Virus record (IMG/VR): IMGVR_UViG_3300027996_002186
Span: 1 to 64,000 of that record
Strand: one strand, 5' to 3'
DNA length: 64,000 bases
Part shown: positions 11,100 to 48,614 of the stretch, piece after piece
Position numbering within the stretch: position 1 is the first letter of the stretch
How the letters are laid out: the number at the start of each line of letters is the position of its first letter
The notes under the pieces: model-generated
The model's database searches: none
Told to the model about the DNA's origin: nothing
What the model saw: the letters and a program-made list of their open reading frames with translations, nothing else
Made by a program: the position numbers and the translations under genes

Positions 11100-11366
11100 A
11101 TGATAATATTTAATACCATAAAGAAAGCAGAACATTATGTCTCCTACTGTAACAAGAAGGTTGATCGGGAAGAGGGTGGATATGATTGGTCCTCTGTAAG
11201 AACTTTTATAGAGGGTGAATATATTATATGCAATAGCTCCGGTGATGGTTGTGGTTGTGGGTGTGATGATTATATGTATGATTATAATGAAGTAATTGGT
11301 CGTATAAAATCGTATGATAAAAAAAGTATTCGTGGTAATAAACTAAAACAGATCATCGGTTTTTGA
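11100..11366 (+). CDS. hypothetical protein with C-terminal RxxK(L/I)xxI tag
   Basis: GCGCGC cluster; ends IRGNKLKQIIGF. Confidence 0.7.
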   Translation: MIIFNTIKKAEHYVSYCNKKVDREEGGYDWSSVRTFIEGEYIICNSSGDGCGCGCDDYMYDYNEVIGRIKSYDKKSIRGNKLKQIIGF

Positions 11367-11434
11367 ACAGATTTGAACAGAAAAAAATCTACAATATCTC
11401 AATAAATAAATAATTTATATTAATATATATAAAT

Positions 11435-11944
11435 ATGTTATTAAAGTATAAACTTTTTTTAGAAAAAAAATTCGATTCTAGAAAAGATATTGAGGGTTAT
11501 GTAGATGCCAATGAATTGGTTGGACAAAGACTTTGGTTTCATACCAATAGGACTAATCGTAATAACGGTAATAATGGGATGATTGGTGTTTATAGTACAT
11601 CACCTTCTGGTAGAAAAAAGGGTTTAGCTGGTAGGTATACGAATGAAGTTAGACTAACAGATCCTATTTTCTTTCAGACCTCAATAGCAGGATCTGATAC
11701 TATAAAGGCTACAAAAAAGAGAGGTTTAATAGCAGGAGTTTCGGGTGTAGTTGTTGAAACAAATAATGATATAAATAATATGATTCCGATAACTTACAAC
11801 CCCAACGAAAATGGGTATTTTCATGAGGTGGGAGATGTGGATGCAAAAGAAATAATATCGGGTAGTGAGGTATATTTCAACTCAACAGAAGATGGACAAT
11901 GGTTTATCTATGTGAAAAATCCCGTGTATCAATTACTCAAATAG
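11435..11944 (+). CDS. N-terminal-motif phage protein
   Basis: MLLKYKLFLE; TTAATATATA upstream. Confidence 0.8.
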   Translation: MLLKYKLFLEKKFDSRKDIEGYVDANELVGQRLWFHTNRTNRNNGNNGMIGVYSTSPSGRKKGLAGRYTNEVRLTDPIFFQTSIAGSDTIKATKKRGLIAGVSGVVVETNNDINNMIPITYNPNENGYFHEVGDVDAKEIISGSEVYFNSTEDGQWFIYVKNPVYQLLK

Positions 11945-12149
11945 AAAATAAACCGAGTTCCGATTCAAATATTACTCCAAAAATATATAAGCCAAAAAAT
12001 TGGTCGTTGAGTAGCACTGGATTTATAACAATACCAAATTATTGGATTGAAGGAAGACAACCAGATTTACGTTTAGATATCTACGACATATACTTTCTTA
12101 AAGTGGTAATATTAATTTATGATATGTTTATTTTTAATATATAACTATA

Positions 12150-12704
12150 ATGAAACACCTTATAAGATATAATGAGTCTGATGAGTCTGATGATAATAAA
12201 TTAGATATTAAGTATATAGAATCTTGCTTTGCTGAATTAATAGATAATTATATTGATTATAATAATGGTTATTTAGGAAGAAATAGTTGGACGAAAAATC
12301 CTATTACTAGTAGTTTAGAATATGGTGCTGAGGATTATTACAGTAATGAAAGTTGGTCTATTAGGTTATTACTTGAAGGAACACCAACAAATATGTCTGA
12401 TGATCTATCCGATGGTAGTATAAAAACATCAGGGGTTCATAGATCATCATATAGAATTGGATATAAGTTAGGTAAGTTAGTCAAGGACGCAAATGAAAAA
12501 CTTGAGATATTAAAGGAAATTGAAGTGGGTGTTAAACGAATTAAGGAAAAATACCCATCATATAATATAGATTTCAATAAACAATTTACACATAGTAAGG
12601 ATACACAAACCACGATACAAGAATTTATAGTTGTTGGTATTAGTCAACCACATTCAGATCGTTTACGACAGGTTAAATATAACTGGAAAGACGCGAATAT
12701 TTAA
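12150..12704 (+). CDS. N-terminal-motif protein, paralog family
   Basis: MKHLIRYNES; YIESCFAELIDN. Confidence 0.8.
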   Translation: MKHLIRYNESDESDDNKLDIKYIESCFAELIDNYIDYNNGYLGRNSWTKNPITSSLEYGAEDYYSNESWSIRLLLEGTPTNMSDDLSDGSIKTSGVHRSSYRIGYKLGKLVKDANEKLEILKEIEVGVKRIKEKYPSYNIDFNKQFTHSKDTQTTIQEFIVVGISQPHSDRLRQVKYNWKDANI

Positions 12705-13054
12705 AAGATAATTGTATTAATTTTATATCCTCTTTCAAACATTTTATAAGCTCTCAGAAAATCTTCTTGTTTCGTAAATAAGCTTATTAAATAGTTTTCA
12801 AATTCTACACCAGTGTAACCATCCATGAGCGAGTTTCTAATTCCTCCTACCTTTATAACAATACCTTCATAATCAAAGACAGAATGATCAGTGTCTATAT
12901 CAATACTAAAATTACTCAAAAGGAATCCTATGTGTTTCGCTTTTTCTAAGTATTCTAATCCGATTTTATCATCATAATCACCACACATTATATCATTGAG
13001 GTTTTCACTTAAACCTCCAAAAGTTTTAAATGGTGTTTTATCCAAATGTTTCAT
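12701..13054 (-). CDS. hypothetical protein with C-terminal tag
   Basis: Ends ERGYKINTIIF; TATATTTG box at 13147-13154(-). Confidence 0.7.
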   Translation of the reverse strand: MKHLDKTPFKTFGGLSENLNDIMCGDYDDKIGLEYLEKAKHIGFLLSNFSIDIDTDHSVFDYEGIVIKVGGIRNSLMDGYTGVEFENYLISLFTKQEDFLRAYKMFERGYKINTIIF

Positions 13055-13178
13055 TTAATAAATTTACTGTGTATAATATAATCGACATACACATCAACCA
13101 TATTAAAAACTTGTTAATATTTTCTTTATACTTTTTATACATATCACAAATATAAGGATTATTATTAATATATAACAT

Positions 13179-13610
13179 ATGAAACATCTCAAAAGAATAA
13201 ATGAGTTATATCTAACATCAGATGTGTCTAGTGTTATAGATGATATATTATTGGAGATTAATGATATACCTAAGTTTGTTGGTCTTAATTGGAATCATAC
13301 GGATCGTTTGGGTCGGGCATCTGAACATAGTTTTTTGGTTATTATTAAGTTGAGTGAGGGTATAGAAGATGGTATGGATTATGGTGTTGGTTTAGATGAG
13401 GAAATAACAGAAACTATTAAAAGGTTATTAGAATTTATGACAAGCAATCGATATGAATACTTGATGGAATTTGGAACAGATAACATACCACCTGGTACTT
13501 CAAAAAAAGAATTAAGTGATTATATTAGGAAGTTTGAATATAGTGAATTATCTGATAATGATTTAACTATGTGGGTGGATGAATTTATAAGAATAACTTT
13601 TACAAAATGA
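13179..13610 (+). CDS. N-terminal-motif protein, paralog family
   Basis: MKHLKRINE; VIDDILLEIND...TIKRLLEFM. Confidence 0.8.
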   Translation: MKHLKRINELYLTSDVSSVIDDILLEINDIPKFVGLNWNHTDRLGRASEHSFLVIIKLSEGIEDGMDYGVGLDEEITETIKRLLEFMTSNRYEYLMEFGTDNIPPGTSKKELSDYIRKFEYSELSDNDLTMWVDEFIRITFTK

Positions 13611-14026
13611 GATACATGAAAACATATGAATCATTTGGGAATCCCTTTGGTAACAGTCCGAGGGATAGACGAATCAAGTTGTACAGTTTCCCCAGGGCAA
13701 CACTTTTACTTGAAATCGAGGATATTCTAAGAGAGTTAGAGGATAATAATATACGTGTTGAGGTATATTTTTGGGATGGTGTTGAGGTTTTCTTAACCAG
13801 TAGAAACGAACATGAAGTTAGAAGAGGCTTACTAGCTCCTGATACATTCCCATATGAGGTTATAAAACCTAATATAGAGCATCTAGTTTCTTTCTTAGAA
13901 GAAATTGGATATAAAATTAAAAGTATTCATAATATTGTTAATCTTGAATCAAGAGGATCAATAACTCAATATCCTGATTTGGATGGTGAAGAAATAGGTA
14001 GATTGGAATTTAGATTTATCAAATAA
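13607..14026 (+). CDS. N-terminal-motif protein, paralog family
   Basis: MRYMKTYES; EIEDILRELEDNN...IEHLVSFLEEIGY. Confidence 0.8.
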   Translation: MRYMKTYESFGNPFGNSPRDRRIKLYSFPRATLLLEIEDILRELEDNNIRVEVYFWDGVEVFLTSRNEHEVRRGLLAPDTFPYEVIKPNIEHLVSFLEEIGYKIKSIHNIVNLESRGSITQYPDLDGEEIGRLEFRFIK

Positions 14027-14207
14027 TTAATTACTTTATAAACAATACAACATTTAATTTTTAGTTCCATTTTTCTAATTCATATTCCTTTAAGGTTATC
14101 CAAATACCAAGTATTCTATGTTGTAAAGCTCTAGTAGTAACTAAACAAGTTGCCTTGCGGTTTCGGATAGTAAAAATATTTTTAGTTTTTATTCTATACA
14201 TAGTTAA

Positions 14208-14567
14208 TTATTTTAAAATACTATTGATTTTTTCATCACGAATCTCTAATAGTAGTTGATCTTTATCAAACTCAGGGTAAGCAAATTCACCGACACATAC
14301 TTGTGTGTGTCCATCTTTGACATAGAGTTCCCAAGCATCTCCAATACCTTGTCCAATACCAGATATCTTAAAAATATTATCTGGTTTGGTTTTAGAAAAT
14401 TTAATTATATCTTCTTCGTATGAATACCACTCACACCATGAATCTGCGTCTGAATCACCATATCTATCAAAGGCGTATTTAGCACTATCAGAAAAATTTC
14501 TAAATTTATTAATTAACTTATTACTACCCTCCACAATAGTAAATTGATACTTTGTTAAATATGACAT
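14208..14567 (-). CDS. phage hypothetical protein with C-terminal tag
   Basis: Start MSYLTKY; ends IRDEKINSILK. Confidence 0.75.
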   Translation of the reverse strand: MSYLTKYQFTIVEGSNKLINKFRNFSDSAKYAFDRYGDSDADSWCEWYSYEEDIIKFSKTKPDNIFKISGIGQGIGDAWELYVKDGHTQVCVGEFAYPEFDKDQLLLEIRDEKINSILK

Positions 14568-14624
14568 TAAACCAAATCTTTTATATCTTTGAATAAAAAT
14601 AATAATCACCCCTCGATAATATCA

Positions 14625-14828
14625 TTAAACTTTATATTTTTCAAGGTAAGTATCAAATGTTTTATCACATAAATCATTTCTAAAACCTTTAATAATAGTC
14701 TTATAGAAATATCCCGTATGTCTTTTAGCATACAAGTCAATAACATTACTAGCGTTACCGCAATCATTCATAGTTTCACAACCAGAAATAATTTCAGTTA
14801 CTTTATCAATTTCAAAATCTGTGTTCAT
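14625..14828 (-). CDS. hypothetical protein
   Basis: ORF downstream of TACATTTG box at 14864-14871(-). Confidence 0.65.
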   Translation of the reverse strand: MNTDFEIDKVTEIISGCETMNDCGNASNVIDLYAKRHTGYFYKTIIKGFRNDLCDKTFDTYLEKYKV

Positions 14829-14909
14829 AGTTTATATTTTTTAATTATTACTTTATTTATATACAAATGTAAGGATATTATCATACTAATACAAATTAAT
14901 ATATACTTT

Positions 14910-15050
14910 ATGGAAGGAATGAGGAAAATTATTATGTTTAGTCTTGTAATGATAGTGTTAAGTTCTTGTGGAGTACTCAAGGGTGGTAAAGGTAAATGTG
15001 AGTGTGAGGACTGGGGTCGAAGAGAGTCTGAAAAGACTGATAGTGTATGA
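14910..15050 (+). CDS. small lipoprotein
   Basis: MRKIIMFSLVMIVLSS-C lipobox; TTAATATATA at 14896-14905. Confidence 0.6.
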   Translation: MEGMRKIIMFSLVMIVLSSCGVLKGGKGKCECEDWGRRESEKTDSV

Positions 15051-15436
15051 AATACCTAAAAAAATTCAATGATATAAGATTCGAAATAGAAGAATCTGAT
15101 TCAACTAAAATACGTATGTATGATGTTGATGAAAAAGTTGGTTATTCATCAGTAACTATAAAGGATAATATTTTTGATAAATGGAATTTACATGATGATT
15201 TAGAAGTTGATCCGATAAAAAATACTAAAAGCTTATACATTCTAGGAATATCAATGAGGAATAGGAGAACAGGTTATGGTTCTAATTTAATAAACTATAT
15301 TGAGGAATATGCTAATAAGAAAGGATGTGAATACATCACACTAAGTTCTATTACCGATGCTTTGGGGTTCTGGAAAAAAATGGGATATGAAGTTTATAGT
15401 ATGGGTGATTACTATTCAATGTATAAGAAGTTATAA
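15047..15436 (+). CDS. GNAT N-acetyltransferase with N-terminal motif
   Basis: RRTGYGSNLI acetyl-CoA motif A and ALGFWKKMGY motif B; starts MKYLKKFND. Confidence 0.85.
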   Translation: MKYLKKFNDIRFEIEESDSTKIRMYDVDEKVGYSSVTIKDNIFDKWNLHDDLEVDPIKNTKSLYILGISMRNRRTGYGSNLINYIEEYANKKGCEYITLSSITDALGFWKKMGYEVYSMGDYYSMYKKL

Positions 15437-15465
15437 ACCTTATTGATATTGCTTATATAATGTTT

Positions 15466-15783
15466 ATGGATTTAGTAGAAATAAGATATGTTGGTGATAA
15501 GAGTTGGTCAGTTGTAACTCGATTCTTAGCAACAGGGATGTCTGGGATTGAAATGAGAGAGATTGATAAAAATGGACCTAAATTAACTCTAATCAACAAT
15601 CTAAATAAAGAATTTATCAAAGAGCGTACTTGTAATTGGGAGAAGGAGGATTATGAATACACAACACCATGTGGTGTTAATTTCGATTGTGATAAAGTTA
15701 CTAAAATTAACGATAATAACCTTGGTTATGTCCTCCACTACTGTCCAAATTGTGGTGGTAAGTTAGATTTAAATCTAATTTAA
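15466..15783 (+). CDS. zinc-ribbon protein
   Basis: TPCG...YCPNCGGKL. Confidence 0.7.
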   Translation: MDLVEIRYVGDKSWSVVTRFLATGMSGIEMREIDKNGPKLTLINNLNKEFIKERTCNWEKEDYEYTTPCGVNFDCDKVTKINDNNLGYVLHYCPNCGGKLDLNLI

Positions 15784-15792
15784 ATCTATTGG

Positions 15793-16260
15793 TTAACTTT
15801 TACCTATTCTCCATGCGTTTTTAACAACTCTTTTAATTTTAGTAGAATCTTCATAGTTACCAATTACGACACCATCTTTGATAGTGAATGCGTGTGATGT
15901 AACTTGTAGTATGTAAGTACCTTTATCATATTCTTTTATGAAAGTACCAACAGTCATTTTACTCTTACCATTGTTAGTTTTTAAGTGGTTTTTATTAATG
16001 GTATTTACCGTTTTTCGATTTAATCTAAGGTTATCATTATTCATACCATTCATACCTGGTGCGAATCCATATGTTCCTTTTTTATTTTTACGGCTGAATT
16101 TATTACAGACCCATTTATGTGATTTATCGTATGTCATACCAGATGCGGATGCAATGGCTCTAACAACACAGTCATTATTTTCTTTTTTAGCAATAACCGA
16201 ATCTCTGTATCCGTTAATCGCGGCTGATGAAGATGTATAAGGAATTTTTTTTGTTTTCAT
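15793..16260 (-). CDS. phage protein with DCxxRA...H motif (possible papain-like fold)
   Basis: NDCVVRAIA...GTYILQVTSHAFTIKDG. Confidence 0.6.
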   Translation of the reverse strand: MKTKKIPYTSSSAAINGYRDSVIAKKENNDCVVRAIASASGMTYDKSHKWVCNKFSRKNKKGTYGFAPGMNGMNNDNLRLNRKTVNTINKNHLKTNNGKSKMTVGTFIKEYDKGTYILQVTSHAFTIKDGVVIGNYEDSTKIKRVVKNAWRIGKS

Positions 16261-16313
16261 AGTAGTGATTTTTATTTCTACTAAGATACGGAATTTATAT
16301 CAATTAAAAAAAT

Positions 16314-16826
16314 TTATTTATTAAGTATTTTATTAAGTTTAGTATCTCTTAGTGTTGATTTACCTATAATATTGTGTATTTTCTTCATTGATTTATCACA
16401 ATTATCTTTTGAATTTTTATTAAATTCATTTTTATAATCAGCATACTTTTGGTAAAAGAATTTATAATCTTTTTCCTTTATATCTCCTTTGTGTGAGAAG
16501 AAGGTACCAGCTGATAAATAGATTGCGGATATTGTAAATATCCCACCTTCAATTTTATACTTTACTTTTAAGTCTACCTTATTTTTAGAAAATTTTATTT
16601 CTTCATAGTTCACTCCCAAATCCCAATTATCAATTTGTACTGAATGGAATATGTCCTCGAATGTGTCTTCAATATATTTGTCCTCGTTGAAGCTTTTTAT
16701 TTCAACAAATTCATCCTTTATGTTTTTTGGAATTACTTTTGATTTTTTTCCTTTATTCATCTTAATACCCAAATAGGAATATGTACATAATATGGCAATA
16801 ATTCCTATAAGTAATAATATATTCAT
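16314..16826 (-). CDS. membrane-anchored protein with C-terminal tag
   Basis: N-terminal TM; ends LRDTKLNKILNK. Confidence 0.75.
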   Translation of the reverse strand: MNILLLIGIIAILCTYSYLGIKMNKGKKSKVIPKNIKDEFVEIKSFNEDKYIEDTFEDIFHSVQIDNWDLGVNYEEIKFSKNKVDLKVKYKIEGGIFTISAIYLSAGTFFSHKGDIKEKDYKFFYQKYADYKNEFNKNSKDNCDKSMKKIHNIIGKSTLRDTKLNKILNK

Positions 16827-16843
16827 TTTGTAATTTTTTTTAA

Positions 16844-17033
16844 TATTGTTTTCATTAAAGTAGTCTAATGAAAGATTAACTTACTGATATCAATGAACCT
16901 CACTGTGTTGAATTTAACAGACTCTTTAAGAGGTTTGATAGTCTTAGTAGTATTCTCTATAATAGTTAGCTCAGTCCTCTAAAAAGACACCCAGTTGTGA
17001 TTCTTAGTCTATCAACCGGGTTATTGTTTTCAT
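16844..17033 (-). ncRNA. candidate structured element between 12-bp direct repeats
   Basis: ATGAAAACAATA repeated at both ends; internal hairpins; no ORF. Confidence 0.35.
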
Positions 17034-17035
17034 TT

Positions 17036-17509
17036 TTATTTTTCAAAATAATCAGTTAATTCATCCTTCAATATCTCTCTATATTTTAGAGTTCCTATTC
17101 CGTTATCTAGATAAATCCATATTATTGGTTTCATTTTACTAATGAATTCTCTCATTTCATCAGTAGCAACTTCTGACCACCTTTCATCTAAGACAGATAA
17201 ATTATCAACCTTGATGTAATATCTACTACCAACTTTACAACTACCAGATGGGATTTCTTTTATACAAGTATATAACTCAACCAAATCATTATCGATATCG
17301 ATATTACATTTAATATCTTCTTCTTTAGATAATTCAGATTTTAAATCTATAAGATCTGTCTTATGTTTGAGCAAATACTCTTTAATAATTGGATCATTAT
17401 CATCAAAAATATTTAATGCGTTAGTTAATACTACATGTTTGTTTTCTAAATTAGCAGCATTCTCAAAGTCTGATTCGAATTGTTCTATTGTGTAAGAAGT
17501 TTCTATCAT
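17036..17509 (-). CDS. hypothetical protein
   Basis: 157-aa ORF. Confidence 0.75.
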   Translation of the reverse strand: MIETSYTIEQFESDFENAANLENKHVVLTNALNIFDDNDPIIKEYLLKHKTDLIDLKSELSKEEDIKCNIDIDNDLVELYTCIKEIPSGSCKVGSRYYIKVDNLSVLDERWSEVATDEMREFISKMKPIIWIYLDNGIGTLKYREILKDELTDYFEK

Positions 17510-17545
17510 GTGTATAATTTTAGAGGGGATATTAACCCCCTATTT

Positions 17546-17734
17546 TTACGAAAGAATACCTTTTCCAAGAATAAGTGGAGAAGCATCTTTGTTTGTTGTT
17601 ATGGTAAAAAGATTTTCATATTCCTTTATGATAAGAGCTTTATCACCGAACATTTTTTTATAGTTCTCTCTAGCATAAGCTTCAACTTCATCTCTTACTG
17701 AATCTTCCATTATAATTTCTTCTTTTCTTTTCAT
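17546..17734 (-). CDS. hypothetical protein
   Basis: 62-aa ORF in - strand gene run. Confidence 0.65.
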   Translation of the reverse strand: MKRKEEIIMEDSVRDEVEAYARENYKKMFGDKALIIKEYENLFTITTNKDASPLILGKGILS

Positions 17735-17783
17735 TTCTTTTCTTTTTATAGGTTTATAATTGAATACAAAAATACAAATCTAT

Positions 17784-18041
17784 TTAATATATTCCTAATT
17801 TATTTAACTTTTTTATTCTATTATTAATTTTTTTTATTCTATACTGAGTATTTTTATAATTATTCATTATACAACTCTTCATAACAAGAGCCATATAGTC
17901 AAACTCTTTAGTGTTCTTGTTTGGTTTATAATGATGATAATGGTGTAACTTGGTTTTGTTAATAATGTCTTTTTTATTAATAAACCCAGTTATACCTGAA
18001 TTTTTGACCAACCTTTCATATAAATCATCAAAATCTAACAT
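17784..18041 (-). CDS. hypothetical protein, C-terminal tag variant
   Basis: Ends NRIKKLNKLGIY. Confidence 0.6.
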   Translation of the reverse strand: MLDFDDLYERLVKNSGITGFINKKDIINKTKLHHYHHYKPNKNTKEFDYMALVMKSCIMNNYKNTQYRIKKINNRIKKLNKLGIY

Positions 18042-18050
18042 TTTATAAAA

Positions 18051-18248
18051 CTACTTTCCATTTATATTTGATGCTATTGACAAAACCTCATAACTACAAC
18101 CATTATCAGAATTTTCATTCATAACTTCAGCAAGTTTATTTGCTACGTTTACTTGTGGTATTTCTAATACCTCACTATAACCATTTGTTAAAAATACATG
18201 GCTCTTCTTACCACTTTTGATAAGGGTTTTTTTAATTACATAAATCAT
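18051..18248 (-). CDS. hypothetical protein
   Basis: 65-aa ORF. Confidence 0.65.
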   Translation of the reverse strand: MIYVIKKTLIKSGKKSHVFLTNGYSEVLEIPQVNVANKLAEVMNENSDNGCSYEVLSIASNINGK

Positions 18249-18311
18249 ATTTCTCTATTTTTTAATTTTCAATTATACAAAAAGTCTATTTTATAAATAT
18301 AAGTAAATTAT

Positions 18312-18569
18312 TTACAATACCTTTCTAATTCTTACTTTTTTATATTTAAATTTTTCAATAACTATTGTATCTGTACAAGACCAATTAGACTCTTCTATAT
18401 AAATACAAAATTTATCACAATTATAATCTTCATAGTGTGAGTGATGTGATGGTATTGTTATAGTATCCTCTATTACTAAAATTTCCACACCATCATGAAC
18501 ATAATGTTCTGTGGTTTTACAAGATGTGAATATTATTGTAAGTGTTAGTAAGTATATTAATATCTTCAT
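18312..18569 (-). CDS. lipoprotein
   Basis: MKILIYLLTLTIIFTS-C lipobox. Confidence 0.7.
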   Translation of the reverse strand: MKILIYLLTLTIIFTSCKTTEHYVHDGVEILVIEDTITIPSHHSHYEDYNCDKFCIYIEESNWSCTDTIVIEKFKYKKVRIRKVL

Positions 18570-18597
18570 TTTATTATTTTTATCTATTACTATTTGA

Positions 18598-18831
18598 TTA
18601 ATACCATATTTGAAAATATCTGAAAATATTCCCGGGCTCTTCTTTATCCATTGATAAGTAAATTGGTAGATTTTGGTCATGGTCATTATCCATTATTTGA
18701 ATATCACTATCTGATATATGAAGTATTTCATATTCCTTACCAGGTGTTAAAAGAACAGTCATTGGGTAAATACAAGTTAGTTTTTCACCAACTGATATTT
18801 TTCTACTATTAATTGATATTTTCTTTGACAT
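18598..18831 (-). CDS. hypothetical protein
   Basis: TATCTTTG box (18836-18843) 4 nt upstream of ATG. Confidence 0.7.
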   Translation of the reverse strand: MSKKISINSRKISVGEKLTCIYPMTVLLTPGKEYEILHISDSDIQIMDNDHDQNLPIYLSMDKEEPGNIFRYFQIWY

Positions 18832-18854
18832 ATAACAAAGATAAGGAAAATATA

Positions 18855-19289
18855 TTAAAGTTTACGATATTTTAATATTATATCTATATGTGATGTTTCC
18901 ATATCTTTGATATGTTTTAATTTGGAATATGAATGTTTTTTATTCATACGAGAGTCATCTATATGATTAAATTCTCTATATGTTAACTTCCAAAGTTCTA
19001 ACCCATATTCTTTCTGTAAGAGTGGTAATGCGAAGTTAAGAACTCCCATAACATCATAGACTTTAAATCTACTAAAACTTGGTAAGGTATATCTTTCTAC
19101 AATCTTATCGATTTCTATTTTAACGTGTGGTGTCAATTCCATATTCATTTTAACTTCAACAGTAAACCCCAAATCACTTAATTCGATTAGAGATTCCTCC
19201 ACAACATATTTTAAATCTGTTGAAGTATCCTTCTTTTTCTTAAAGAAAGAAAAGTTATTAAATAATTCATATGTTTTGATATACTCCAT
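18855..19289 (-). CDS. N-terminal-motif protein, paralog family
   Basis: MEYIKTYELFNN; VVEESLIELSDLGFTVEV. Confidence 0.8.
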   Translation of the reverse strand: MEYIKTYELFNNFSFFKKKKDTSTDLKYVVEESLIELSDLGFTVEVKMNMELTPHVKIEIDKIVERYTLPSFSRFKVYDVMGVLNFALPLLQKEYGLELWKLTYREFNHIDDSRMNKKHSYSKLKHIKDMETSHIDIILKYRKL

Positions 19290-36627: not shown

Positions 36628-37386
36628 TTATTTTAAGTGGGGTAATACTTCTTTTGCGTAGTAATCATCAAACCCTTCAAGTAATCCAGTAATTGGAGTA
36701 CTCTTATCAGTTATAATGATTTCATCAATGAAACCAAAGTCTAAAGCTTCTTGTGAGTTTAACCACTTATCTCTTCTAGCACTTTCTAATACTTCATCAA
36801 AAGATTTACCACTATTCTCAGCTAACATCTTAAATAAGATATAATTATACTTCTCAGATTCCATTTGTGAGATGCGATTATCAGCAACATGTCCTTGTGC
36901 ACCACTCGATACTTGGTGAATCATAACCTTTGAGAAATTCAAAGATGAACGTTTGCCTTTTGTACCAGATGATAATAGAATAGAACCCATAGATGCTGCC
37001 ATACCTGTGTTGATAGTTTCAATATCACAATCGATATATCTCATTACATCAACCATAGATAATCCACTTTTAACTGAACCACCTGGTGAATCAATGTGCA
37101 TCCTAATATCTCTTTTCTCCGCTGCTCCTTCTTCTACGGAATCAAGATACATCAATTGTGCTTGTACAACAGTTGACATATTATCATTCACAACACCAGC
37201 AACCCATAAAATTCTTTCTCTCATTAATCTAGAGAAAATATCCATTTGAGTTACTCTCATTTCTCTTTCTTCAAGTATGTATGGTGTCATACTATTCTCC
37301 ATTTGTTTTTGGTAATAGTGTAAGTTCATAGAAGATAACCCCTCACTCTTTGCGTACTTATTAAAATCTTTCCCGTAATCTATCAT
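36628..37386 (-). CDS. clpP: ATP-dependent Clp protease proteolytic subunit
   Basis: MDIFSRLMRERI, IDSPGGSV, GMAASMG (catalytic Ser), VMIHQ, RDKWL. Confidence 0.97.
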   Translation of the reverse strand: MIDYGKDFNKYAKSEGLSSMNLHYYQKQMENSMTPYILEEREMRVTQMDIFSRLMRERILWVAGVVNDNMSTVVQAQLMYLDSVEEGAAEKRDIRMHIDSPGGSVKSGLSMVDVMRYIDCDIETINTGMAASMGSILLSSGTKGKRSSLNFSKVMIHQVSSGAQGHVADNRISQMESEKYNYILFKMLAENSGKSFDEVLESARRDKWLNSQEALDFGFIDEIIITDKSTPITGLLEGFDDYYAKEVLPHLK

Positions 37387-38631: not shown

Positions 38632-40113
38632 TTATTGACAATCATAACAAGGTCGTTCACCTCTCCCACTACAATCAGAACATTCTATGGTTGAATTACC
38701 ATCACATTCAGTACAATCTACTTTACCCCTAGCATCACAATCCTCACAATCTACATCATGTTCTTCACCATCAGATCCTTCTTCTGTTATAGTTCCTCCA
38801 CCATCACAATTTGAACAATTTTCTGTACCATATCCGTCACATTCTGGACAGTCTCTTTCACCACTACCACCACAATCATAACATTCCACTTCGCCTCCAC
38901 CACCACATCCCTCACATCTATAATGTGAGCCTTCAGTATCTTCTAATATATAACAATTACCACATTCATCTATTGATAGTGTACCATTATCTTTATTCCA
39001 ATATTTCAAAGTGTCTAAGTAAGGATATTTTTCATATTCACCTGGTTTTATATCCACGATTATGTTCAAATTTGTATCATCACCATTAGGATCAATACAA
39101 CTACCATTGGCGTTGGATGCGTTTCCACGTTTTGTATACCAACCATTCTCTTTAGCATAATCCTTAAATAATTGAACATCAGAATCATTGGCTGTGTATA
39201 TTCTATCCATAAATCTTTTACCATCTCTCAATTTCCAAAGTAATGCTCTTCCTAAAATTTTATCTGTATCATCATCTGATTTATAAATAACCAAAGTACA
39301 AACTTCTGGATTAGAAATATAGATATCAAAAAATTCCTCATCAACAGCGGACATACAAGAACTACCTAATACGCCCCTCCTTGTCGAGTAATGTGAATAG
39401 TGATACCAATATCCTATTTTATCACCAGTAACTTCTTCAAATAGTGAAAATTTATCATTAAATTTATCAATTGTTGCTTTATATAAATTAACAAATACTT
39501 CAATATCCTTATCAAGGAATTCTATATCATTAGTTTTAAGTAATGCTCTAATAGCTCTACCTACTTTAACTTCTTGTCTATTCGTTGACCAAATTTTATC
39601 CAATCTATCATCAACCTTTCTAATCTTTTCGGCATTTATGACCAATTCTGTACTTGGGAATTTAACATAAACAAATCTCTTACCCGATTCTTCCGAAACT
39701 GTTTCTTTAATAATTTCTCCTAGTTCATCATTTTCTGGTTTTATCAATTCCTCACCAGGTGTGAATCCTAAAGCATCGAAAATAGTTTTATTTTTATATT
39801 CTCCTCCTTCATTTTTATTAAAAGTTAACCAACCACCATTATTACCAACAAATCTAACCTTAATATTTTCCTCACTCAGTATTTGTTGTGCTCTTCTATC
39901 TGGTATAAATGATACTTTATCATTTTTATCCATTACTATATCAAAATAATTAGACCTAACGTCTAAATCTTTATTCTCAACATCTAAAAGTGATTTGGAT
40001 ACTGGGTTCTCTATTTTTGAAAGAGTGAGTCTAAATTTATCAGAATAAACGACATCCGACTCCAATATTAACTCTAATGACTCATTTATGAAATCAAAAT
40101 ACTTTTTTAACAT
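38632..40113 (-). CDS. N-terminal-motif protein with 8 DnaJ-type CxxCxGxG repeats
   Basis: MLKKYFDFINESLELILES; LGSSCM..GRALLW..FMDRIYT core; paralog of 27949..29415. Confidence 0.85.
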   Translation of the reverse strand: MLKKYFDFINESLELILESDVVYSDKFRLTLSKIENPVSKSLLDVENKDLDVRSNYFDIVMDKNDKVSFIPDRRAQQILSEENIKVRFVGNNGGWLTFNKNEGGEYKNKTIFDALGFTPGEELIKPENDELGEIIKETVSEESGKRFVYVKFPSTELVINAEKIRKVDDRLDKIWSTNRQEVKVGRAIRALLKTNDIEFLDKDIEVFVNLYKATIDKFNDKFSLFEEVTGDKIGYWYHYSHYSTRRGVLGSSCMSAVDEEFFDIYISNPEVCTLVIYKSDDDTDKILGRALLWKLRDGKRFMDRIYTANDSDVQLFKDYAKENGWYTKRGNASNANGSCIDPNGDDTNLNIIVDIKPGEYEKYPYLDTLKYWNKDNGTLSIDECGNCYILEDTEGSHYRCEGCGGGGEVECYDCGGSGERDCPECDGYGTENCSNCDGGGTITEEGSDGEEHDVDCEDCDARGKVDCTECDGNSTIECSDCSGRGERPCYDCQ

Positions 40114-42276: not shown

Positions 42277-43056
42277 TTATACTCTCTCTTCCCAAAGTTC
42301 ACCAATATTAAGTAATCGATGTTGTATACCATACATATTTATAGTAGCACTTCTGTGGAAGTGACCATAATAGTGGTGTGTGATATCATTACCATTTAAT
42401 CTCAATAAATGAAACATATCTGTTATTTGATTTCGTTCAAATAACAGATCGGTTTTTAATTCTGTATCACCAGTATCTCTAATTATACCTTCAACAAAAG
42501 GACCAAGTCCAATGCTATTATCAACAGGACAATAATCGGGTGAGTTATGTGTAACTACAATATCGATGTCTTTCATGTTAGCTATTTTATCACGATCTAA
42601 TACGAATACTTCATCTTTCCACCAACTTTGACCTGGGTGTATTGTATAGTCACCTTTTCTTTGTTTATCAGTTCTTCTCCAATTTCTATCAACACTCACA
42701 GCACCACCAACACAAAGTATATTTTTTGTTTCGGTAAATCCTAATGTATCTAATTCTAAATTAAGGATGGTGTAGTCTGGAATAAGTTTAATATTACTAA
42801 ATCCAAATGGGTCATTATCGAAATAAGGTTTGAAGTCATGATTACCACGAATTGCGTATAACATGATGTTATTCTTCTCAAGAATAGTATTTACATATCC
42901 TAATGTTCGGCGCTCTTTCTCAAGAGTAGCAAAACCAACACCAAAGTCACCAACTTGAATTATGATAGCATCTTTTATATCATACTGCTTAACATATTGA
43001 TTAATCAAGTTAAAATTTCCGTGGATATCACCGAGATATAAAATTCTTTTTTTCAT
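42277..43056 (-). CDS. calcineurin-like metallophosphoesterase
   Basis: GDIHG, GDFG, RGNHD, VTHNSP, YGHFH; TATATTTG at 43061-43068. Confidence 0.93.
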   Translation of the reverse strand: MKKRILYLGDIHGNFNLINQYVKQYDIKDAIIIQVGDFGVGFATLEKERRTLGYVNTILEKNNIMLYAIRGNHDFKPYFDNDPFGFSNIKLIPDYTILNLELDTLGFTETKNILCVGGAVSVDRNWRRTDKQRKGDYTIHPGQSWWKDEVFVLDRDKIANMKDIDIVVTHNSPDYCPVDNSIGLGPFVEGIIRDTGDTELKTDLLFERNQITDMFHLLRLNGNDITHHYYGHFHRSATINMYGIQHRLLNIGELWEERV

Positions 43057-45597: not shown

Positions 45598-45999
45598 TTA
45601 AAAGTTTGTGTGTGCTACACCATCACCGAATGTAACATATTCCTTTTCTTTTTCTTTTGTAAAAGAAAGATATTTATCAATAGGATAATGTTCACGATCT
45701 TCGGTATCTTTTTCGAACCATTCTGATATTTTCATTAAGTCACGTATCCTCTCAATTATATCTTTTAGGTTTGAAGAATCTGGTGTTTCCTTATATTCTT
45801 TCCATTGAATTCTAACAAATATTTGATCACTTTTGGGTAACATCTTACTAACATTTATAGAAAATCCTTCGTCTTCCAATTCCATACAAATATCCTTTAT
45901 CGTTTGTACCAAACAATCTGTTTCTTCGTTATCATATCCCATTCTACAAGGTTTGGAAACGTTTGAGTTAAATTCATTTATAGATTTTAGATATCTCAT
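45598..45999 (-). CDS. N-terminal-motif protein, paralog family
   Basis: MRYLKSINEF; TIKDICMELEDEGF...IIERIRDLM. Confidence 0.8.
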   Translation of the reverse strand: MRYLKSINEFNSNVSKPCRMGYDNEETDCLVQTIKDICMELEDEGFSINVSKMLPKSDQIFVRIQWKEYKETPDSSNLKDIIERIRDLMKISEWFEKDTEDREHYPIDKYLSFTKEKEKEYVTFGDGVAHTNF

Positions 46000-46517
46000 T
46001 TTTCGTAAGGAGCAAATATGTGTTCCCAGGGGATAATATCTTCTGTGTGATACATAGCAATATCAAATCTAATACCATGTTCACCATCACCTTGAAATAC
46101 CGAGGACTCTAAAGAAAAATTAAGTATTTTGAATTTATACCCAAAATCTTTTATTTTAATTAACGAATCAGAAAACTCATTAAAGAATTCAATTGTACTA
46201 GACATTTGTTTATCATTTACATCTCTAATTGATGATGATAAATCATCAAATCTTAATCTAAGTGTATATCCTTTATAAAGAGGTTTATCTATGTAATTTA
46301 TTCTATCTCTAACTTCAAAGTTTTCATCAACTAAAGTATGTGTTGAGTTTTTAATTCCTATAATTTTACCACCTAAATCAACCAATTCTAAGAAAAATTC
46401 TTTTAACTCACCATCTCTATTATATTCAGATCTCATGATAGCTAATTCAAACCAACCATCTCCCTCGCCCGATTCGTTTATCATCTCTACATTATTATAA
46501 TTCTTTAAGTATTTCAT
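45996..46517 (-). CDS. N-terminal-motif protein, paralog family
   Basis: MKYLKNYNNVEMINES; LKEFFLELVDLG. Confidence 0.8.
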   Translation of the reverse strand: MKYLKNYNNVEMINESGEGDGWFELAIMRSEYNRDGELKEFFLELVDLGGKIIGIKNSTHTLVDENFEVRDRINYIDKPLYKGYTLRLRFDDLSSSIRDVNDKQMSSTIEFFNEFSDSLIKIKDFGYKFKILNFSLESSVFQGDGEHGIRFDIAMYHTEDIIPWEHIFAPYEK

Positions 46518-46527
46518 TAACTATATA

Positions 46528-46748: not shown

Positions 46749-46765
46749 GTTGTATATATAAAAAC

Positions 46766-46800
46766 AAAAAAACCCAATCACTTTTGGTGATTGGGTTTTT
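46766..46800. terminator. intrinsic terminator after slyD-like gene
   Basis: AAAAACCCAATCAC-TTTTG-GTGATTGGGTTTTT. Confidence 0.88.
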
Positions 46801-46819
46801 ATATCAATATGTTTGGTTA

Positions 46820-47266
46820 TTAAGCCTCTGTTGTCTCAGTAGCAGTTGCTTGAATATCAATAACTTCAATGTCAAATTGGATATCTTTCCCAGCTAACGG
46901 GTGATTACCATCAATCACAATGTGATTTTCTTTAATCTCTTTAACTTTTACTGGTGTACTTTGACCATTGTCTGATTGTGCTTCAAGTGTTAATCCAACT
47001 TCAACATCCCCAGGCATTTGGTCTTTAGGTACTTCTACAATTAGGTCTTCTCTTACTGGTCCGTAAGCATCTTCTGGTGTTAAAAACTCTGTGTTGACTT
47101 TATCTCCTATATTTTTACCGATTAAAACGTCTTCAAATCCCGGAATTATTTGTCCAGAACCAATTTGAAACGTTAAGGGATCTCTTCCCTGTGATGTGTC
47201 AAAAGTTGTTCCATCAGTTAATTTACCAGTATAATGAACGCTAACTACATTTCCATTTTCTATCAT
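46820..47266 (-). CDS. slyD: FKBP-type peptidyl-prolyl isomerase (SlyD/FkpB-like)
   Basis: VSVHYTGKL.DG..FDTS, G.GQIIPGFE, PEDAYG, IDGNHPLAGK. Confidence 0.93.
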   Translation of the reverse strand: MIENGNVVSVHYTGKLTDGTTFDTSQGRDPLTFQIGSGQIIPGFEDVLIGKNIGDKVNTEFLTPEDAYGPVREDLIVEVPKDQMPGDVEVGLTLEAQSDNGQSTPVKVKEIKENHIVIDGNHPLAGKDIQFDIEVIDIQATATETTEA

Positions 47267-47527
47267 AATAATTAATTTATTTTTAAGTTATATTATTAAT
47301 TCTTTTTTTGTTGTTATAATTGGTTAATTAATAACCATTTTTTATATTTAAGTGTGTTACTTAGAAAGTCATCTATTTCATATTCAACTGAATCTGTTGG
47401 TACCTCAATTATTAATATATTATCTTTTATAATCATAATTCTTAAATGTTTGTATATTTATATATTTTTCTTAAATGTTTTTGTTAATTATATATTAAAC
47501 TTTTTGTTATTATTAATTAGAATTAAT

Positions 47528-48217
47528 GTGAGAGAATCTTTCGAAGAATATAAAAAAACAATAGAAACCTTAATTATCAACTTCAAATATCTATATGATG
47601 GTGATGTTAAATCATCTAGTAATAAATCATACTCTGGTAGTATATCACATAAAAACACTTCACCTAGTTTTGTTATAAATTGTATAAATCAAATATACGA
47701 TGAAAGTATTCAATCGATGATCGATAAGTCAATACCAATGAGTATAGGATTAAAAACTGAACCATTGATAGGTAAACCAAGTAATGTGGCTGATAATATA
47801 TTTTATTATATTGATAAATTAAAAACAAACTCATTCAAACCTCTTTATGTTTTTTGTTCATATAATGGAAGAAAATTATTTGGTATAACTAAAGAAATTA
47901 ATAAAAACAAGCCTTTCCCGGGACACTTTTATGATATAGAAAAGTATCATAGTAGATCATATGACTTATATTTATCACCTATACTAATTAATGATAAAGA
48001 AGATGATATTGAGATTTATGTAACTGACAAATCAATACAAAGCTTAGTTTATTCTATACAAAATATGGATTATAAAATTTCAAAAGATGATGAATCATAC
48101 AAACATACAATGTCTTATCATTTTTATGATTGTGACTTTACCTGTTATAAATTGATAATCAAGGATGTATCTAAATGGAGGGATGAGAAAATAAATGAAA
48201 TATTAAATGAGAATTGA
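47528..48217 (+). CDS. hypothetical protein with C-terminal tag
   Basis: Probable GTG start after TAAACT-N16-TAGAAT; ends WRDEKINEILNEN. Confidence 0.75.
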   Translation: MRESFEEYKKTIETLIINFKYLYDGDVKSSSNKSYSGSISHKNTSPSFVINCINQIYDESIQSMIDKSIPMSIGLKTEPLIGKPSNVADNIFYYIDKLKTNSFKPLYVFCSYNGRKLFGITKEINKNKPFPGHFYDIEKYHSRSYDLYLSPILINDKEDDIEIYVTDKSIQSLVYSIQNMDYKISKDDESYKHTMSYHFYDCDFTCYKLIIKDVSKWRDEKINEILNEN

Positions 48218-48614
48218 TTGTGATAGTTTGGATTTTGGATTGGAATGTTATGATCCAAGTTCTTTAGAGGAACGAAATAGATTAAAATCTAGTAAATTAG
48301 TTAAGGATTTATTGAAAATAAATAATAAAATGGAACCTAGAAGAAACTATATGGTTATATCAATGAATGTCTTTAATCTATTAGAGTATCACGATAGATT
48401 TGAACATATAAAATTATCTAGTAAAAAAGAAATAGGCCCATTAACACTTGTTGGTTATATAGGTGGTTTAGATTGTTATGTAGATTTAAATATGAAACAT
48501 AATAACATACTATTACATTACGATAAACAAGTTATTCGTAATCTTAGATTAGAATCTATATTAGATGATAGTAATATTATTGATGATGAGGTTGAAATTG
48601 AAGTGATAATTTAA
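48207..48614 (+). CDS. hypothetical protein
   Basis: Near-terminal IRNLRLESILD tag variant. Confidence 0.75.
   Translation: MRIDCDSLDFGLECYDPSSLEERNRLKSSKLVKDLLKINNKMEPRRNYMVISMNVFNLLEYHDRFEHIKLSSKKEIGPLTLVGYIGGLDCYVDLNMKHNNILLHYDKQVIRNLRLESILDDSNIIDDEVEIEVII

What the first reader, a model, noticed from the sequence alone, without database searches (positions are those of the whole stretch)
11100..48614. A second, C-terminal tag R-D-x-K-[IL]-N-x-I-L on a non-overlapping set of proteins
Seen at or near C-termini: IRGNKLKQII (11100), ERGYKINTII (12701), IRDEKINSIL (14208), LRDTKLNKIL (16314), NRIKKLNKL (17784), WRDEKINEIL (47528), IRNLRLESIL (48207). These proteins are otherwise unrelated, lack a clear N-terminal motif and mostly lie in non-late units. 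Inference: a short amphipathic helix acting as a shared docking/localisation signal, an oligomerisation tag, or a degron (the phage encodes its own ClpP). The phage would then have two peptide addressing systems.
Basis: partly seen in the sequence, partly recalled or inferred. Interest (0 to 1): 0.78.

Follow-up and report, generated by a model that had tools for sequence, protein, structure and literature searches.

The report
Shared C-terminal docking helix in megaphage proteins
About one in eight proteins of this 0.6-Mb Bacteroidetes megaphage, mostly small and unrelated to each other, end in the same ten-residue helix (R-D-x-K-I/L-N-x-I-L), which behaves like a portable plug for one shared but still unidentified partner.

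Summary
All seven peptides exist, and six lie within 3 residues of a stop codon. In the related complete genome LR745206, a regex derived only from the window finds 48 C-terminal hits, against about 0.1 in shuffles. An HMM finds 114 carriers and a looser pattern 147 of 983 ORFs.

Selection acts on the protein, because codon usage in the motif matches the genome. Carriers are not paralogs: 105 fall into 101 BLAST clusters. They include an alpha/beta domain, whose roughly 1,500 relatives mostly lack the tail, and an HK97 capsid-like fold. There is also an internal copy in a DEAD helicase.

AlphaFold models the tail as a helix of low confidence, although its key residues are invariant in 43 aligned homologs. 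This is the signature of a binding motif.

Tail genes avoid the N-terminal MKYLKxF tag (1 overlap against 13.5 expected). They sit behind Bacteroidetes-type TAnnTTTG boxes rather than the AATATATA box of tagged and baseplate genes.

In LR756504 the tails of non-homologous proteins have shifted together to R-K-x-I-I-x-D-L-L, which suggests co-evolution with one partner. The partner and the function (docking, degron or loading) remain unproven. The phage does encode ClpP, in the window, and its relative also encodes an N-domain-less ClpC.

The parts
11100..11366 (+). Carrier gene, 88 aa. The tail ..SIRGNKLKQIIGF is encoded at 11328-11357. This is a weak instance (HMM 6.4 bits).
   Evidence: The ortholog in LR745206 (2766-3035) keeps a tail with K3 changed to S (..RTQSLKLILDD..).
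12701..13054 (-). Carrier gene, 117 aa. The tail ..FERGYKINTIIF is encoded at 12707-12736. This is a weak instance (HMM 5.2 bits).
   Evidence: The 50%-identical ortholog in LR745206 stops just before the tail (..ELFESKF-stop), so the tail is gained or lost between orthologs.
14208..14567 (-). Carrier gene, 119 aa, of the 'MGYYT' family (phrog_6306). The tail ..LLEIRDEKINSILK is encoded at 14214-14243.
   Evidence: 15.7 bits. The family has 1,490 representatives that mostly end near query residue 105 (..FDESKLK). Only about 4 of 150 carry a tail. In the AF2 model the body has pLDDT 93-98, and the tail is helix 110-118 in the final blocks, which average 72-81.
16314..16826 (-). Carrier gene, 170 aa, with a hydrophobic N-terminus. 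The tail ..STLRDTKLNKILNK is encoded at 16323-16352.
   Evidence: 15.8 bits. The LR745206 relative (20590-20793) keeps ..ASIRDSKIDDILR.
17784..18041 (-). Carrier gene, 85 aa. The tail ..NNRIKKLNKLGIY is encoded at 17787-17822. It is the 'LGI' sub-form of the tail.
   Evidence: It is not scored by the main HMM, but it matches R..K[IL]..LG[IL], which has 22 C-terminal members in LR745206. Orthologs alternate between ..KILKK and ..DLGI endings.
47528..48217 (+). Carrier gene, 229 aa, GTG start, with an HK97 capsid/encapsulin-type fold. The tail ..SKWRDEKINEILNEN is encoded at 48176-48205.
   Evidence: 118 of 119 homologs keep the tail. R218, I222 and L226 are invariant. Tail entropy is 0.90 against 1.45 for the body. 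In the AF2 model the body has pLDDT 90-97, and the tail is helix 214-227 in final blocks averaging 63-67. The fold matches HK97 capsid proteins (Foldseek probability 1.0; VIA Z 10.1 to T4 gp23), and the alignment ends at residues 210-216.
48207..48614 (+). Carrier gene, 135 aa, overlapping the previous gene. The tail ..QVIRNLRLESIL is encoded at 48534-48563 and is followed by 16 more residues.
   Evidence: 11.4 bits. The LR745206 ortholog has ..YARDLKIESIL plus 16 residues.
36628..37386 (-). Context only: phage ClpP, a candidate component of a partner machine. It is not shown to interact with the tail.
   Evidence: Pfam CLP_protease, E = 8e-53. LR745206 also has a second ClpP and a ClpC-like unfoldase that lacks Clp_N but has a VGF loop.

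Best explanation
The tail is a portable, partner-binding amphipathic helix (a short linear motif). Its form is [hydrophobic]-R-[D/E/N]-x-K-[I/L]-[N/D/K]-x-[I/L]-[L/I], or the variant ending L-G-I.

It has been added, kept, lost and occasionally placed internally on well over a hundred non-homologous proteins of this megaphage lineage. These proteins are mostly small and of unknown function. The invariant Arg and the hydrophobic stripe at +4/+7/+8 lie on one face of the helix.

The helix does not appear to be part of the carrier's own fold. I infer that it plugs every carrier into one common receptor, and that this receptor co-evolves with the phage lineage. The effect is to gather or route one class of phage proteins, namely those expressed from Bacteroidetes-type promoters and not from the box used by baseplate genes.

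Shown: the motif, its modularity, its helicity, its conservation, its exclusivity with the N-terminal tag and with the late-type upstream box, and the concerted change of consensus between lineages.

Inferred: that it binds a single partner. Which partner is not known. My leading named candidate is the phage's own Clp machine (ClpP in the window; a second ClpP and an N-domain-less ClpC in the relative). In that case the tail would be a hand-over or degradation handle. A host hub or a capsid-like shell remains possible.
For: 1. Enrichment and position. LR745206 has 48 C-terminal hits against about 0.1 expected. The HMM finds 114 carriers against 0-1 in controls. A generic pattern finds 147 of 983 ORFs.

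2. Selection on the protein. Codon usage at R, D, K, I4 and N matches genome usage (p = 0.4-1.0), and codons differ among the window copies.

3. Modularity.
- 105 carriers with tails trimmed form 101 BLAST clusters.
- The MGYYT family has 1,490 representatives, and only about 4 of the 150 listed carry a tail.
- Two carriers have different folds: a small alpha/beta domain and an HK97 fold.
- Copies occur internally or near the N-terminus, including inside a DEAD-box helicase.
- Tails are gained or lost between orthologs.

4. Binding-motif signature.
- In 43 homologs at 45-65% identity, R218, I222 and L226 are invariant and K221 nearly so.
- 118 of 119 homologs keep the tail.
- AF2 gives the tail the lowest confidence in the protein (final blocks 63-67, against 90-97 for the body) while still calling it a helix. 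The MGYYT protein shows the same pattern.

5. Concerted evolution. With one generic regex, position +1 is D/E/N in 86% of LR745206 tails, but K/R in about 72% of cluster-weighted LR756504 tails. Position +3 is K in 64% against I in 46%. Non-homologous carriers changed together.

6. Lineage restriction despite similar base composition. Tails are present in the window genome, LR745206, LR756502, LR756504 and an unrelated metagenome contig. They are absent from sampled parts of LR756501, LR756508 and LR756500.

7. Separate gene class. The nearest upstream box is TAnnTTTG in 43 cases against AATATATA in 7 for tail genes. For N-tagged genes the counts are 6 against 61 (p = 7e-18). Baseplate operons in the window carry the AATATATA box.
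Against: - No partner was identified, and no interaction was modelled or measured.
- AF2 output gave no coordinates, so I could not check whether the helix packs on its own domain. Low pLDDT is only indirect evidence.
- The consensus shift between lineages could in principle come from within-genome spread of tail-coding segments by recombination rather than from co-evolution with a receptor. The genome-typical codon usage argues against recent spread.
- In LR756504 many carriers are tandem paralogs (26 clusters for 43 carriers), so part of the abundance there reflects family expansion.
- Gene calls are simple ORF calls. Promoter classes are consensus matches in very AT-rich DNA.
- The early/late assignment is inferred only from the baseplate genes sharing the AATATATA box.
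Confidence: 0.55

Rival explanations
1. Degron. The tail marks early proteins for timed destruction by the phage-encoded ClpC(no N-domain)-ClpP1/P2 protease, or by a host AAA+ protease.
For: - ClpP is encoded in the window.
- LR745206 has two ClpP genes and a ClpC-like unfoldase. It has AAA, AAA_lid_9, UVR, AAA_2 and ClpB_D2-small domains and a VGF ClpP-docking loop, but no Clp_N adaptor domain.
- The tail is terminal, low-confidence and surface-like.
- A carrier gene lies directly downstream of the second ClpP gene.
Against: - The motif sits 0-9 residues from the end, and in some proteins 16-19.
- It also occurs internally or near the N-terminus, unlike ssrA-type tags that use the free carboxylate.
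- Invariant charged residues and a defined helix are more typical of specific docking than of an unfoldase entry site.
- An HK97-fold protein that is strongly conserved in this lineage carries it.
- LR756508 has a ClpC-like gene but no tails in the 50 kb sampled.
Confidence: 0.2
2. Loading peptide for an HK97-fold shell. The tail would target proteins into the prohead, or into an encapsulin-like compartment, as encapsulin cargo peptides and (from memory) the C-terminus of the HK97 protease do.
For: - One conserved carrier (47528-48217) has an HK97 capsid/encapsulin fold of only 229 aa.
- Encapsulin cargo is loaded through short targeting peptides (abstracts listed, e.g. PMC10960027 and PMC8346489).
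- Carriers are small, soluble and diverse, like packaged internal proteins.
Against: - The shell-like protein itself carries the tail, which is not how cargo systems are built.
- The motif does not resemble family-1 encapsulin peptides (own knowledge of their L-x-I-G-S-L-K type consensus).
- Tail genes avoid the box shared by baseplate genes and N-tagged genes. The N-tagged genes are the better candidates for packaged proteins.
- More than 100 cargo types would be unprecedented.
Confidence: 0.08
3. Tail-to-tail zipper. The helices pair with each other (charge-complementary R/K and D/E, with an I/L core). This would oligomerise each carrier or glue all carriers into one assembly or condensate.
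For: - The helix is amphipathic and carries both charges.
- When position +1 turns basic in LR756504, acidic residues rise at -2 and +6. This is compatible with a self-complementary surface.
- Some proteins carry two motif copies (LR745206 543674-544372).
Against: - Nine to twelve residues are too short for a stable coiled coil.
- The invariant Arg sits in the middle of the hydrophobic face, which is unusual for a zipper core.
- There is no heptad extension upstream.
Confidence: 0.08
4. One fast-evolving superfamily. The tail would be the only recognisable remnant of common ancestry rather than an added module.
For: - In LR756504 many carriers are tandem paralogs of small 'GD-I/V-L-I/V-x-K' proteins.
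- Most carriers are short ORFans with no detectable homologs.
Against: - Lengths run from 41 to 731 aa.
- Two modelled carriers have unrelated folds.
- The MGYYT family is overwhelmingly tail-less.
- A helicase carries an internal copy.
- Orthologs occur with and without the tail.
Confidence: 0.05
5. By-product of composition or of a DNA/RNA signal at gene ends, for example the translation-initiation region of the next, overlapping gene.
For: - K, N, I and L are the cheapest residues at 29% GC.
- 58% of carriers are followed by a tightly coupled gene, against 36% of other genes.
- The last two motif codons favour ATA and TTA.
Against: - Shuffles that keep each protein's composition, or that of its last 30 residues, give 0.05-0.13 hits against 48 observed.
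- Sampled regions of LR756500 (24% GC) and LR756501 (31-38% GC), two other AT-rich huge phages, have none.
- Arg, Asp and Lys codon choice follows genome usage.
- About 42% of carriers have no coupled downstream gene.
Confidence: 0.02

Closest known systems
Phage T4 capsid targeting sequence (CTS) of internal proteins
   Same: A roughly 10-residue peptide is shared by otherwise diverse, fast-evolving small phage proteins and serves as an address (concept: PMC3012670). This megaphage also has an N-terminal MKYLKxF tag that resembles the CTS.
   Different: The CTS is N-terminal, belongs to late head proteins and is cleaved off. This tail is C-terminal, is excluded from the N-tagged set, and sits on genes lacking the late-type box. 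No processing site is evident.
Encapsulin cargo targeting peptides and the C-terminal capsid-targeting end of the HK97 protease
   Same: Both are short, mostly C-terminal peptides appended to unrelated proteins that dock on an HK97-fold shell. One carrier here has an HK97 fold.
   Different: The sequence is different (a charged amphipathic helix). There are more than 100 carriers instead of 1-4. The HK97-fold protein is itself a carrier. No shell has been demonstrated.
Helical docking motifs such as the PIP box (Q-x-x-[ILM]-x-x-[FY]-[FY]), LxxLL boxes and bacterial or T4 clamp-binding tails
   Same: The hydrophobic spacing is the same (+4, +7, +8, with a polar residue at +1). The location is mostly extreme C-terminal, with occasional internal copies. 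There are basic flanks, and folding on binding is implied (own knowledge of these motifs; anatomy).
   Different: There is no Gln and there are no aromatic residues. An invariant Arg precedes the motif. The number of carriers far exceeds any known clamp interactome in a phage. No clamp link was tested.
ssrA / ClpX C-motif degrons
   Same: Both are C-terminal peptides read by Clp machines, and the phage encodes Clp components.
   Different: ssrA-type tags end in non-polar residues at the free carboxylate. This motif is charged and helical, sits at a variable distance from the end, and sometimes occurs internally.
C-terminal translocation signals of type IV secretion effectors, and C-terminal F-box-like (PRANC) motifs of poxvirus ankyrin proteins
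   Same: A large share of a proteome, made of unrelated proteins, carries one C-terminal recognition element that hands them, or their bound targets, to a single machine (own knowledge).
   Different: These belong to different organisms and machines and have no sequence similarity. The comparison is only by analogy of logic.

Membership tests
Short linear motif / molecular recognition feature (generic class) | Short (3-15 aa) conserved pattern with a few fixed positions | tested here: met
   The logo from 105 tails fixes R0 (by selection), then D/E/N at +1, K at +3, I/L at +4, I/L at +7 and L/I at +8. In one family of 43 homologs, R, I and L are invariant.
Short linear motif / molecular recognition feature (generic class) | Modular: occurs on non-homologous proteins and is gained or lost independently of the domain | tested here: met
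Short linear motif / molecular recognition feature (generic class) | Lies outside the folded domain, in a region of low structural confidence, yet is conserved | tested here: met
   pLDDT of the final blocks is 63-81 against 90-98 for the body. Structural alignments stop before the tail. Tail entropy is 0.90 against 1.45 for the body.
Short linear motif / molecular recognition feature (generic class) | Binds a defined partner domain | not testable with these tools
   No multimer prediction or binding data were available.
Encapsulin cargo targeting peptide | Terminal peptide on a cargo protein encoded next to an HK97-fold shell gene | tested here: inconclusive
   An HK97-fold 229-aa gene exists (47528-48217). 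However, it carries the tail itself, and most carriers are scattered over the genome.
Encapsulin cargo targeting peptide | Family-1-type consensus (hydrophobic-x-hydrophobic-G-S-L-K/R; own knowledge) | tested here: not met
   The tail logo is R-[DEN]-x-K-[IL]-x-x-[IL]-[LI]. Only the L-G-I ending of the sub-form is faintly reminiscent.
T4-type capsid targeting sequence | N-terminal position on late, head-packaged proteins | tested here: not met
   The tail is C-terminal. The carriers lack the N-tag and the late-type box.
ssrA-like C-terminal degron | Non-polar last residues at the free C-terminus, at a fixed position | tested here: not met
   After the motif there are 0-9 residues, often D/K/N/E. 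Internal copies exist.
PIP-box / clamp-binding motif | Q at position 1 and two aromatic residues at positions 7-8 | tested here: not met
   Position 1 is D/E/N (or K in LR756504), and positions 7-8 are I/L. Only the spacing agrees.
PIP-box / clamp-binding motif | Binding to a sliding clamp | not tested
   The phage clamp was not identified and no interaction was assessed.

The most novel reading that the evidence does not exclude
The tail is a hand-over handle. More than 100 different small proteins of the non-late class would each bind a different host (or phage) target through their variable body, and would use the common helix to dock on the phage's own N-domain-less ClpC-ClpP protease. This would be a virus-encoded targeted-degradation system in bacteria. 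It would be analogous to viral hijacking of ubiquitin ligases through a shared box, with the N-terminal MKYLKxF tag as a second, head-directed address.
Probability: 0.1. Interest if true: 0.92.

Novelty: new variant of a known kind. Interest (0 to 1): 0.72.

Why it matters
Peptide addresses shared by many unrelated phage proteins are rare. The T4 capsid targeting sequence is the classic case.

Here a different, C-terminal address marks roughly 12-15% of the ORFs of the largest known phages, and up to 28% of genes in some regions. It is mutually exclusive with a T4-like N-terminal tag. It also shifts in concert between lineages.

If a single receptor exists, it would organise a large part of the unknown 'dark' proteome of megaphages into one pathway. 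That gives a direct experimental handle (peptide pull-down, tag swap) on more than 100 ORFans at once.

The motif is also a practical annotation tool. An HMM of 16 residues separates the carriers with essentially no false positives.

Tried and rejected
- Pfam and PHROGs on the seven carriers and on the ten largest LR745206 carriers gave nothing, apart from phrog_6306 for 14208 and weak noise such as NUMOD4.
- ESM Atlas look-alikes of two carriers returned only unnamed viral clusters below the reliability threshold.
- A word-based homolog search for 14208 found only the protein itself. The exhaustive HMMER search was needed.
- IMG/VR loci related to the 670-aa neighbour returned only the same phage at 100% identity, so they gave no evolutionary depth.
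- Foldseek of the 14208 model against the PDB gave no significant match.
- Literature searches for the motif or for linear motifs in huge or jumbo phages found nothing relevant.
- A DNA-level repeat or regulatory-site origin is rejected because codon usage is genome-typical.
- A compositional artefact is rejected by the shuffles and by tail-free AT-rich relatives.
- A SAP/HeH/Rho_N-like helix for the L-G-I form is rejected because the Arg-to-Gly spacing is 8 rather than 7 (own comparison).
- I tried to link tails to the presence of ClpC across genomes. The result was inconclusive, because tblastn hits are dominated by bacterial contaminants and LR756508 has ClpC without tails in its sample.
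- I also dropped my own candidate ..EDKVNEIKSIL at 23890-24615, which is not in the finding, because it does not fit the motif.

Full report
**What the window is.** The window is 29% GC. A conserved block is 79% identical in nucleotides to LR745206 (634,780 bp) and 74% identical to LR756502 (642 kb). [quoted passage not shown] IMG/VR holds the same phage at 100% identity on contigs up to 483 kb. The right end of the window carries baseplate and tail genes: a gp5-like hub, a tail lysozyme and a C39-like peptidase. It also encodes ClpP, FKBP, RNase H, RpiB, a cold-shock protein and other enzymes, none of which has the tail.

**The observation.** All seven peptides are present, in frame, at ORF ends. 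The numbers given in the finding are ORF boundaries. The regex R..[KR][IL][NEK].[IL][IL] has six hits in about 18.9k residues of called ORFs, and all six are C-terminal.

Because that regex was fitted to the window, I tested it on independent data. I fetched the whole of LR745206 and called 983 ORFs.
- The same regex gives 55 hits there, 48 of them within 8 residues of the end. Whole-protein shuffles give 0.05, shuffles of the last 30 residues give 0.13, and reversed proteins give 0.
- A 16-column HMM built from the tails finds 114 proteins at 8 bits or more (101 C-terminal). Shuffled sequences give 0 and reversed sequences give 1.
- A second ending, R..K[IL]..L-G-I-stop, adds 22 carriers. The window's NRIKKLNKLGIY belongs to this form.
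- With a generic pattern, 147 of 983 ORFs (15%) carry a tail.

The extended logo is hydrophobic-x-[K/S]-x-x-hydrophobic-R-[D/E/N]-x-K-[I/L]-[N/D/K]-x-[I/L]-[L/I], followed by 0-9 residues, most often one.

**Protein signal or DNA signal.** Arg is encoded by CGT, AGA or AGG in the window copies, and Leu and Ile codons also vary. In LR745206, codon usage at R0, D1, K3, I4 and N5 cannot be distinguished from genome usage (p = 0.4-1.0). Only the last two codons lean towards ATA and TTA. That may reflect the frequent overlap with the next gene's start: 58% of carriers are tightly coupled to a downstream gene, against 36% of other genes. The constraint is therefore on the peptide.

**Are the carriers relatives?**
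- With tails trimmed, 105 carriers fall into 101 BLAST clusters. The only links are window-to-LR745206 orthologs and one pair.
- Lengths run from 41 to 731 aa, with a median of 105. The carriers are mostly soluble.
- Pfam and PHROGs say almost nothing about them.

Two cases settle the question of modularity.

*Carrier 14208-14567.* It belongs to a very large family (1,490 representatives at E of 1e-3 or better, beginning 'MGYYT', about 105 aa, phrog_6306). Its members end at ..FDESKLK, near query residue 105. Only about 4 of the 150 best carry an extension with the motif. In this lineage the tail is therefore an add-on to a pre-existing domain.

*Carrier 47528-48217.* The true start is GTG at 47528, giving 229 aa. 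It has an HK97 capsid/encapsulin fold. Every top Foldseek hit in the PDB, BFVD and AFDB is a capsid or encapsulin protein at probability about 1.0. VIA-align gives Z 10.1 to T4 gp23, 9.2 to gp24, about 9 to HK97 prohead and 8.2-8.8 to encapsulins. The alignments stop at residues 210-216, just before the tail. The 14208 model is a different, small alpha/beta domain.

Other evidence points the same way.
- Motif copies also occur internally or near the N-terminus. One lies between helicase motifs of a DEAD/ResIII helicase in LR745206.
- Orthologs differ in having the tail. The LR745206 ortholog of 12701-13054 stops just before it.

**Structure and conservation.** AlphaFold2 with a 125-sequence alignment models 14208 with pLDDT 93-98 in the body. 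Residues 110-118 (RDEKINSIL) form a helix, in the final blocks that average 72-81. For the HK97-fold carrier the body is at 90-97, and the tail is helix 214-227 in final blocks averaging 63-67.

Yet in 43 homologs at 45-65% identity, R218, I222 and L226 are invariant and K221 nearly so. 118 of 119 homologs keep the tail. The tail window ranks 32nd of 220 for conservation.

A segment that is conserved and helical but not confidently placed is what one expects of a motif that folds on a partner. On a helical wheel, R0, I/L+4, I/L+7 and L+8 share one face (inference from the logo).

**Gene class.** LR745206 also has the N-terminal tag M-K-[Y/H]-[L/I]-K-x-[F/Y] on 90 ORFs, and the window has it on 24 of 119. 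Only one ORF has both tags, against 13.5 expected (p = 4e-6).

Two upstream boxes are over-represented in intergenic DNA.
- TAnnTTTG occurs in 86 of 461 gaps, against 20 when shuffled. It is the Bacteroidetes -7 type (own knowledge).
- (T)AATATATA occurs in 141 gaps, against 39 when shuffled. It usually ends 5-8 nt before the start codon.

The nearest upstream box is TAnnTTTG 43 times and AATATATA 7 times for tail genes. For N-tagged genes the counts are 6 and 61 (Fisher p = 7e-18).

In the window, the AATATATA box heads the baseplate operon and most N-tagged genes, and none of the tail genes. I therefore infer that the AATATATA class is late and that tail genes are mostly not late.

The HK97-fold carrier is ambiguous, because it has a conserved TATATA-like element about 30 nt upstream.

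**Distribution and concerted change.** Tails and N-tags are present in LR756502 (21 of 179 sampled ORFs by HMM) and on an unrelated metagenome contig with tRNA-synthetase genes. They are absent from 100 kb of LR756501 (735 kb), 50 kb of LR756508 and 50 kb of LR756500, although these are also AT-rich.

LR756504 (636 kb) is the most telling case. In its first 50 kb, 43 of 151 ORFs end in a tail, against 1.3 expected. These fall into 26 BLAST clusters, many of them tandem arrays of small 'GD-I-L-I-x-K' proteins. The consensus there is E-[Y/H]-R-K-x-[I/K/R]-I-x-[D/E/N]-L-[L/I/N].

With one generic regex applied to both genomes, position +1 is D/E/N in 86% of LR745206 tails. In LR756504 it is K/R in about 72% of cluster-weighted tails.

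Non-homologous proteins within a genome share a dialect, and the dialect differs between lineages. The simplest reading is co-evolution with one receptor per lineage.

**Mechanism.** I commit to a portable docking helix that couples a large, heterogeneous, mostly non-late set of proteins to one common partner (confidence 0.55). The partner is not identified.

The Clp idea has material support only at the level of parts. There is a ClpP in the window (E = 8e-53). LR745206 has a second ClpP and a 701-aa ClpC-like unfoldase, which has the VGF ClpP-docking loop but lacks the Clp_N adaptor domain.

Several points argue against a classical degron: the variable distance to the end, the internal copies, the invariant charges, and the presence of the tail on a strongly conserved HK97-fold protein.

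The HK97-fold carrier brings encapsulin and HK97 cargo peptides to mind. However, the shell-like protein is itself tagged, and the tail genes are in the wrong expression class for packaged proteins.

A tail-to-tail zipper, a single superfamily and an artefact are progressively less likely, for the reasons given under the rival explanations.

**Limits.** Gene calls are longest-ORF calls. Promoter classes are consensus matches. The other genomes were only sampled, apart from LR745206. No coordinates of the models were available, so helix packing could not be inspected. No interaction was tested.

Noticed in passing
Window, e.g. 4634-4930(+), 15047-15436(+), 20043-20489(+), 31704-32177(+), 45996-46517(-), 50699-51142(-); 27949-29415(+) begins MKSYTEF: An N-terminal tag M-K-[Y/H]-[L/I]-K-x-[F/Y]-x-E occurs on 24 of 119 window ORFs and 90 of 983 LR745206 ORFs. 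It is nearly always behind an (T)AATATATA box that ends 5-8 nt before the ATG. It resembles the T4 capsid targeting sequence (from memory), and it is the counterpart of the C-terminal tail.
   Followed up: partly
Window 47528-48217 (+): This 229-aa tail carrier has an HK97 capsid/encapsulin fold (VIA Z 10.1 to T4 gp23). It is very small for a capsid protein, sits beside the baseplate module, and is conserved in 119 protein clusters from contigs up to 816 kb. Its role is unknown (minor capsid protein, vertex protein or separate shell).
   Followed up: partly
Window 36628-37386 (-); LR745206 123556-124221 (-) and 423224-425329 (+): The phage encodes ClpP. The relative has two ClpP paralogs and a ClpC-like double AAA+ unfoldase that has a VGF loop but lacks the Clp_N adaptor domain. 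Together these could form a complete phage-encoded Clp protease.
   Followed up: partly
LR745206 intergenic regions; window upstream regions (e.g. before 51150-52544, 59864-61720, 22327-22668, 42277-43056): Two upstream box classes, TAnnTTTG and (T)AATATATA, both often end only 4-8 nt before the start codon. This suggests leaderless or very short-leader mRNAs and two transcription programmes.
   Followed up: partly
Window 4931-6316, 6313-7044, 7315-8034 (all -): Three adjacent proteins share a different C-terminal ending, ..Y-[N/E]-x-Q-K-x-R-[F/Y]-[I/L]. They lie in a region with higher GC and have no homolog in LR745206.
   Followed up: no
Window 27949-29415 (+) and 38632-40113 (-): Two proteins of about 490 aa have Cys-rich CxxC C-termini. 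The first has a weak Pfam BSD2/DnaJ-type match and a clear N-terminal tag; the second (MLKKYFDF) only a looser one. Each has an ortholog in LR745206.
   Followed up: no
Window 1-19000: This part is not syntenic with LR745206. Its few homologs map to 600-634 kb and 0-50 kb of that genome, which are the regions richest in tail carriers. It appears to be a hypervariable arm.
   Followed up: no
LR756504 1-50000 (locus L026): Long tandem arrays of 70-100-aa proteins begin with 'GD-I/V-L-I/V-x-K' (SH3-like by eye) and end in the lineage's version of the tail. 28% of ORFs in this stretch are carriers.
   Followed up: partly
Window 14208-14567 (-): The 'MGYYT' domain family (phrog_6306, unknown function) has about 1,500 representatives at 50% clustering. 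The confident AF2 model has no significant PDB match.
   Followed up: partly
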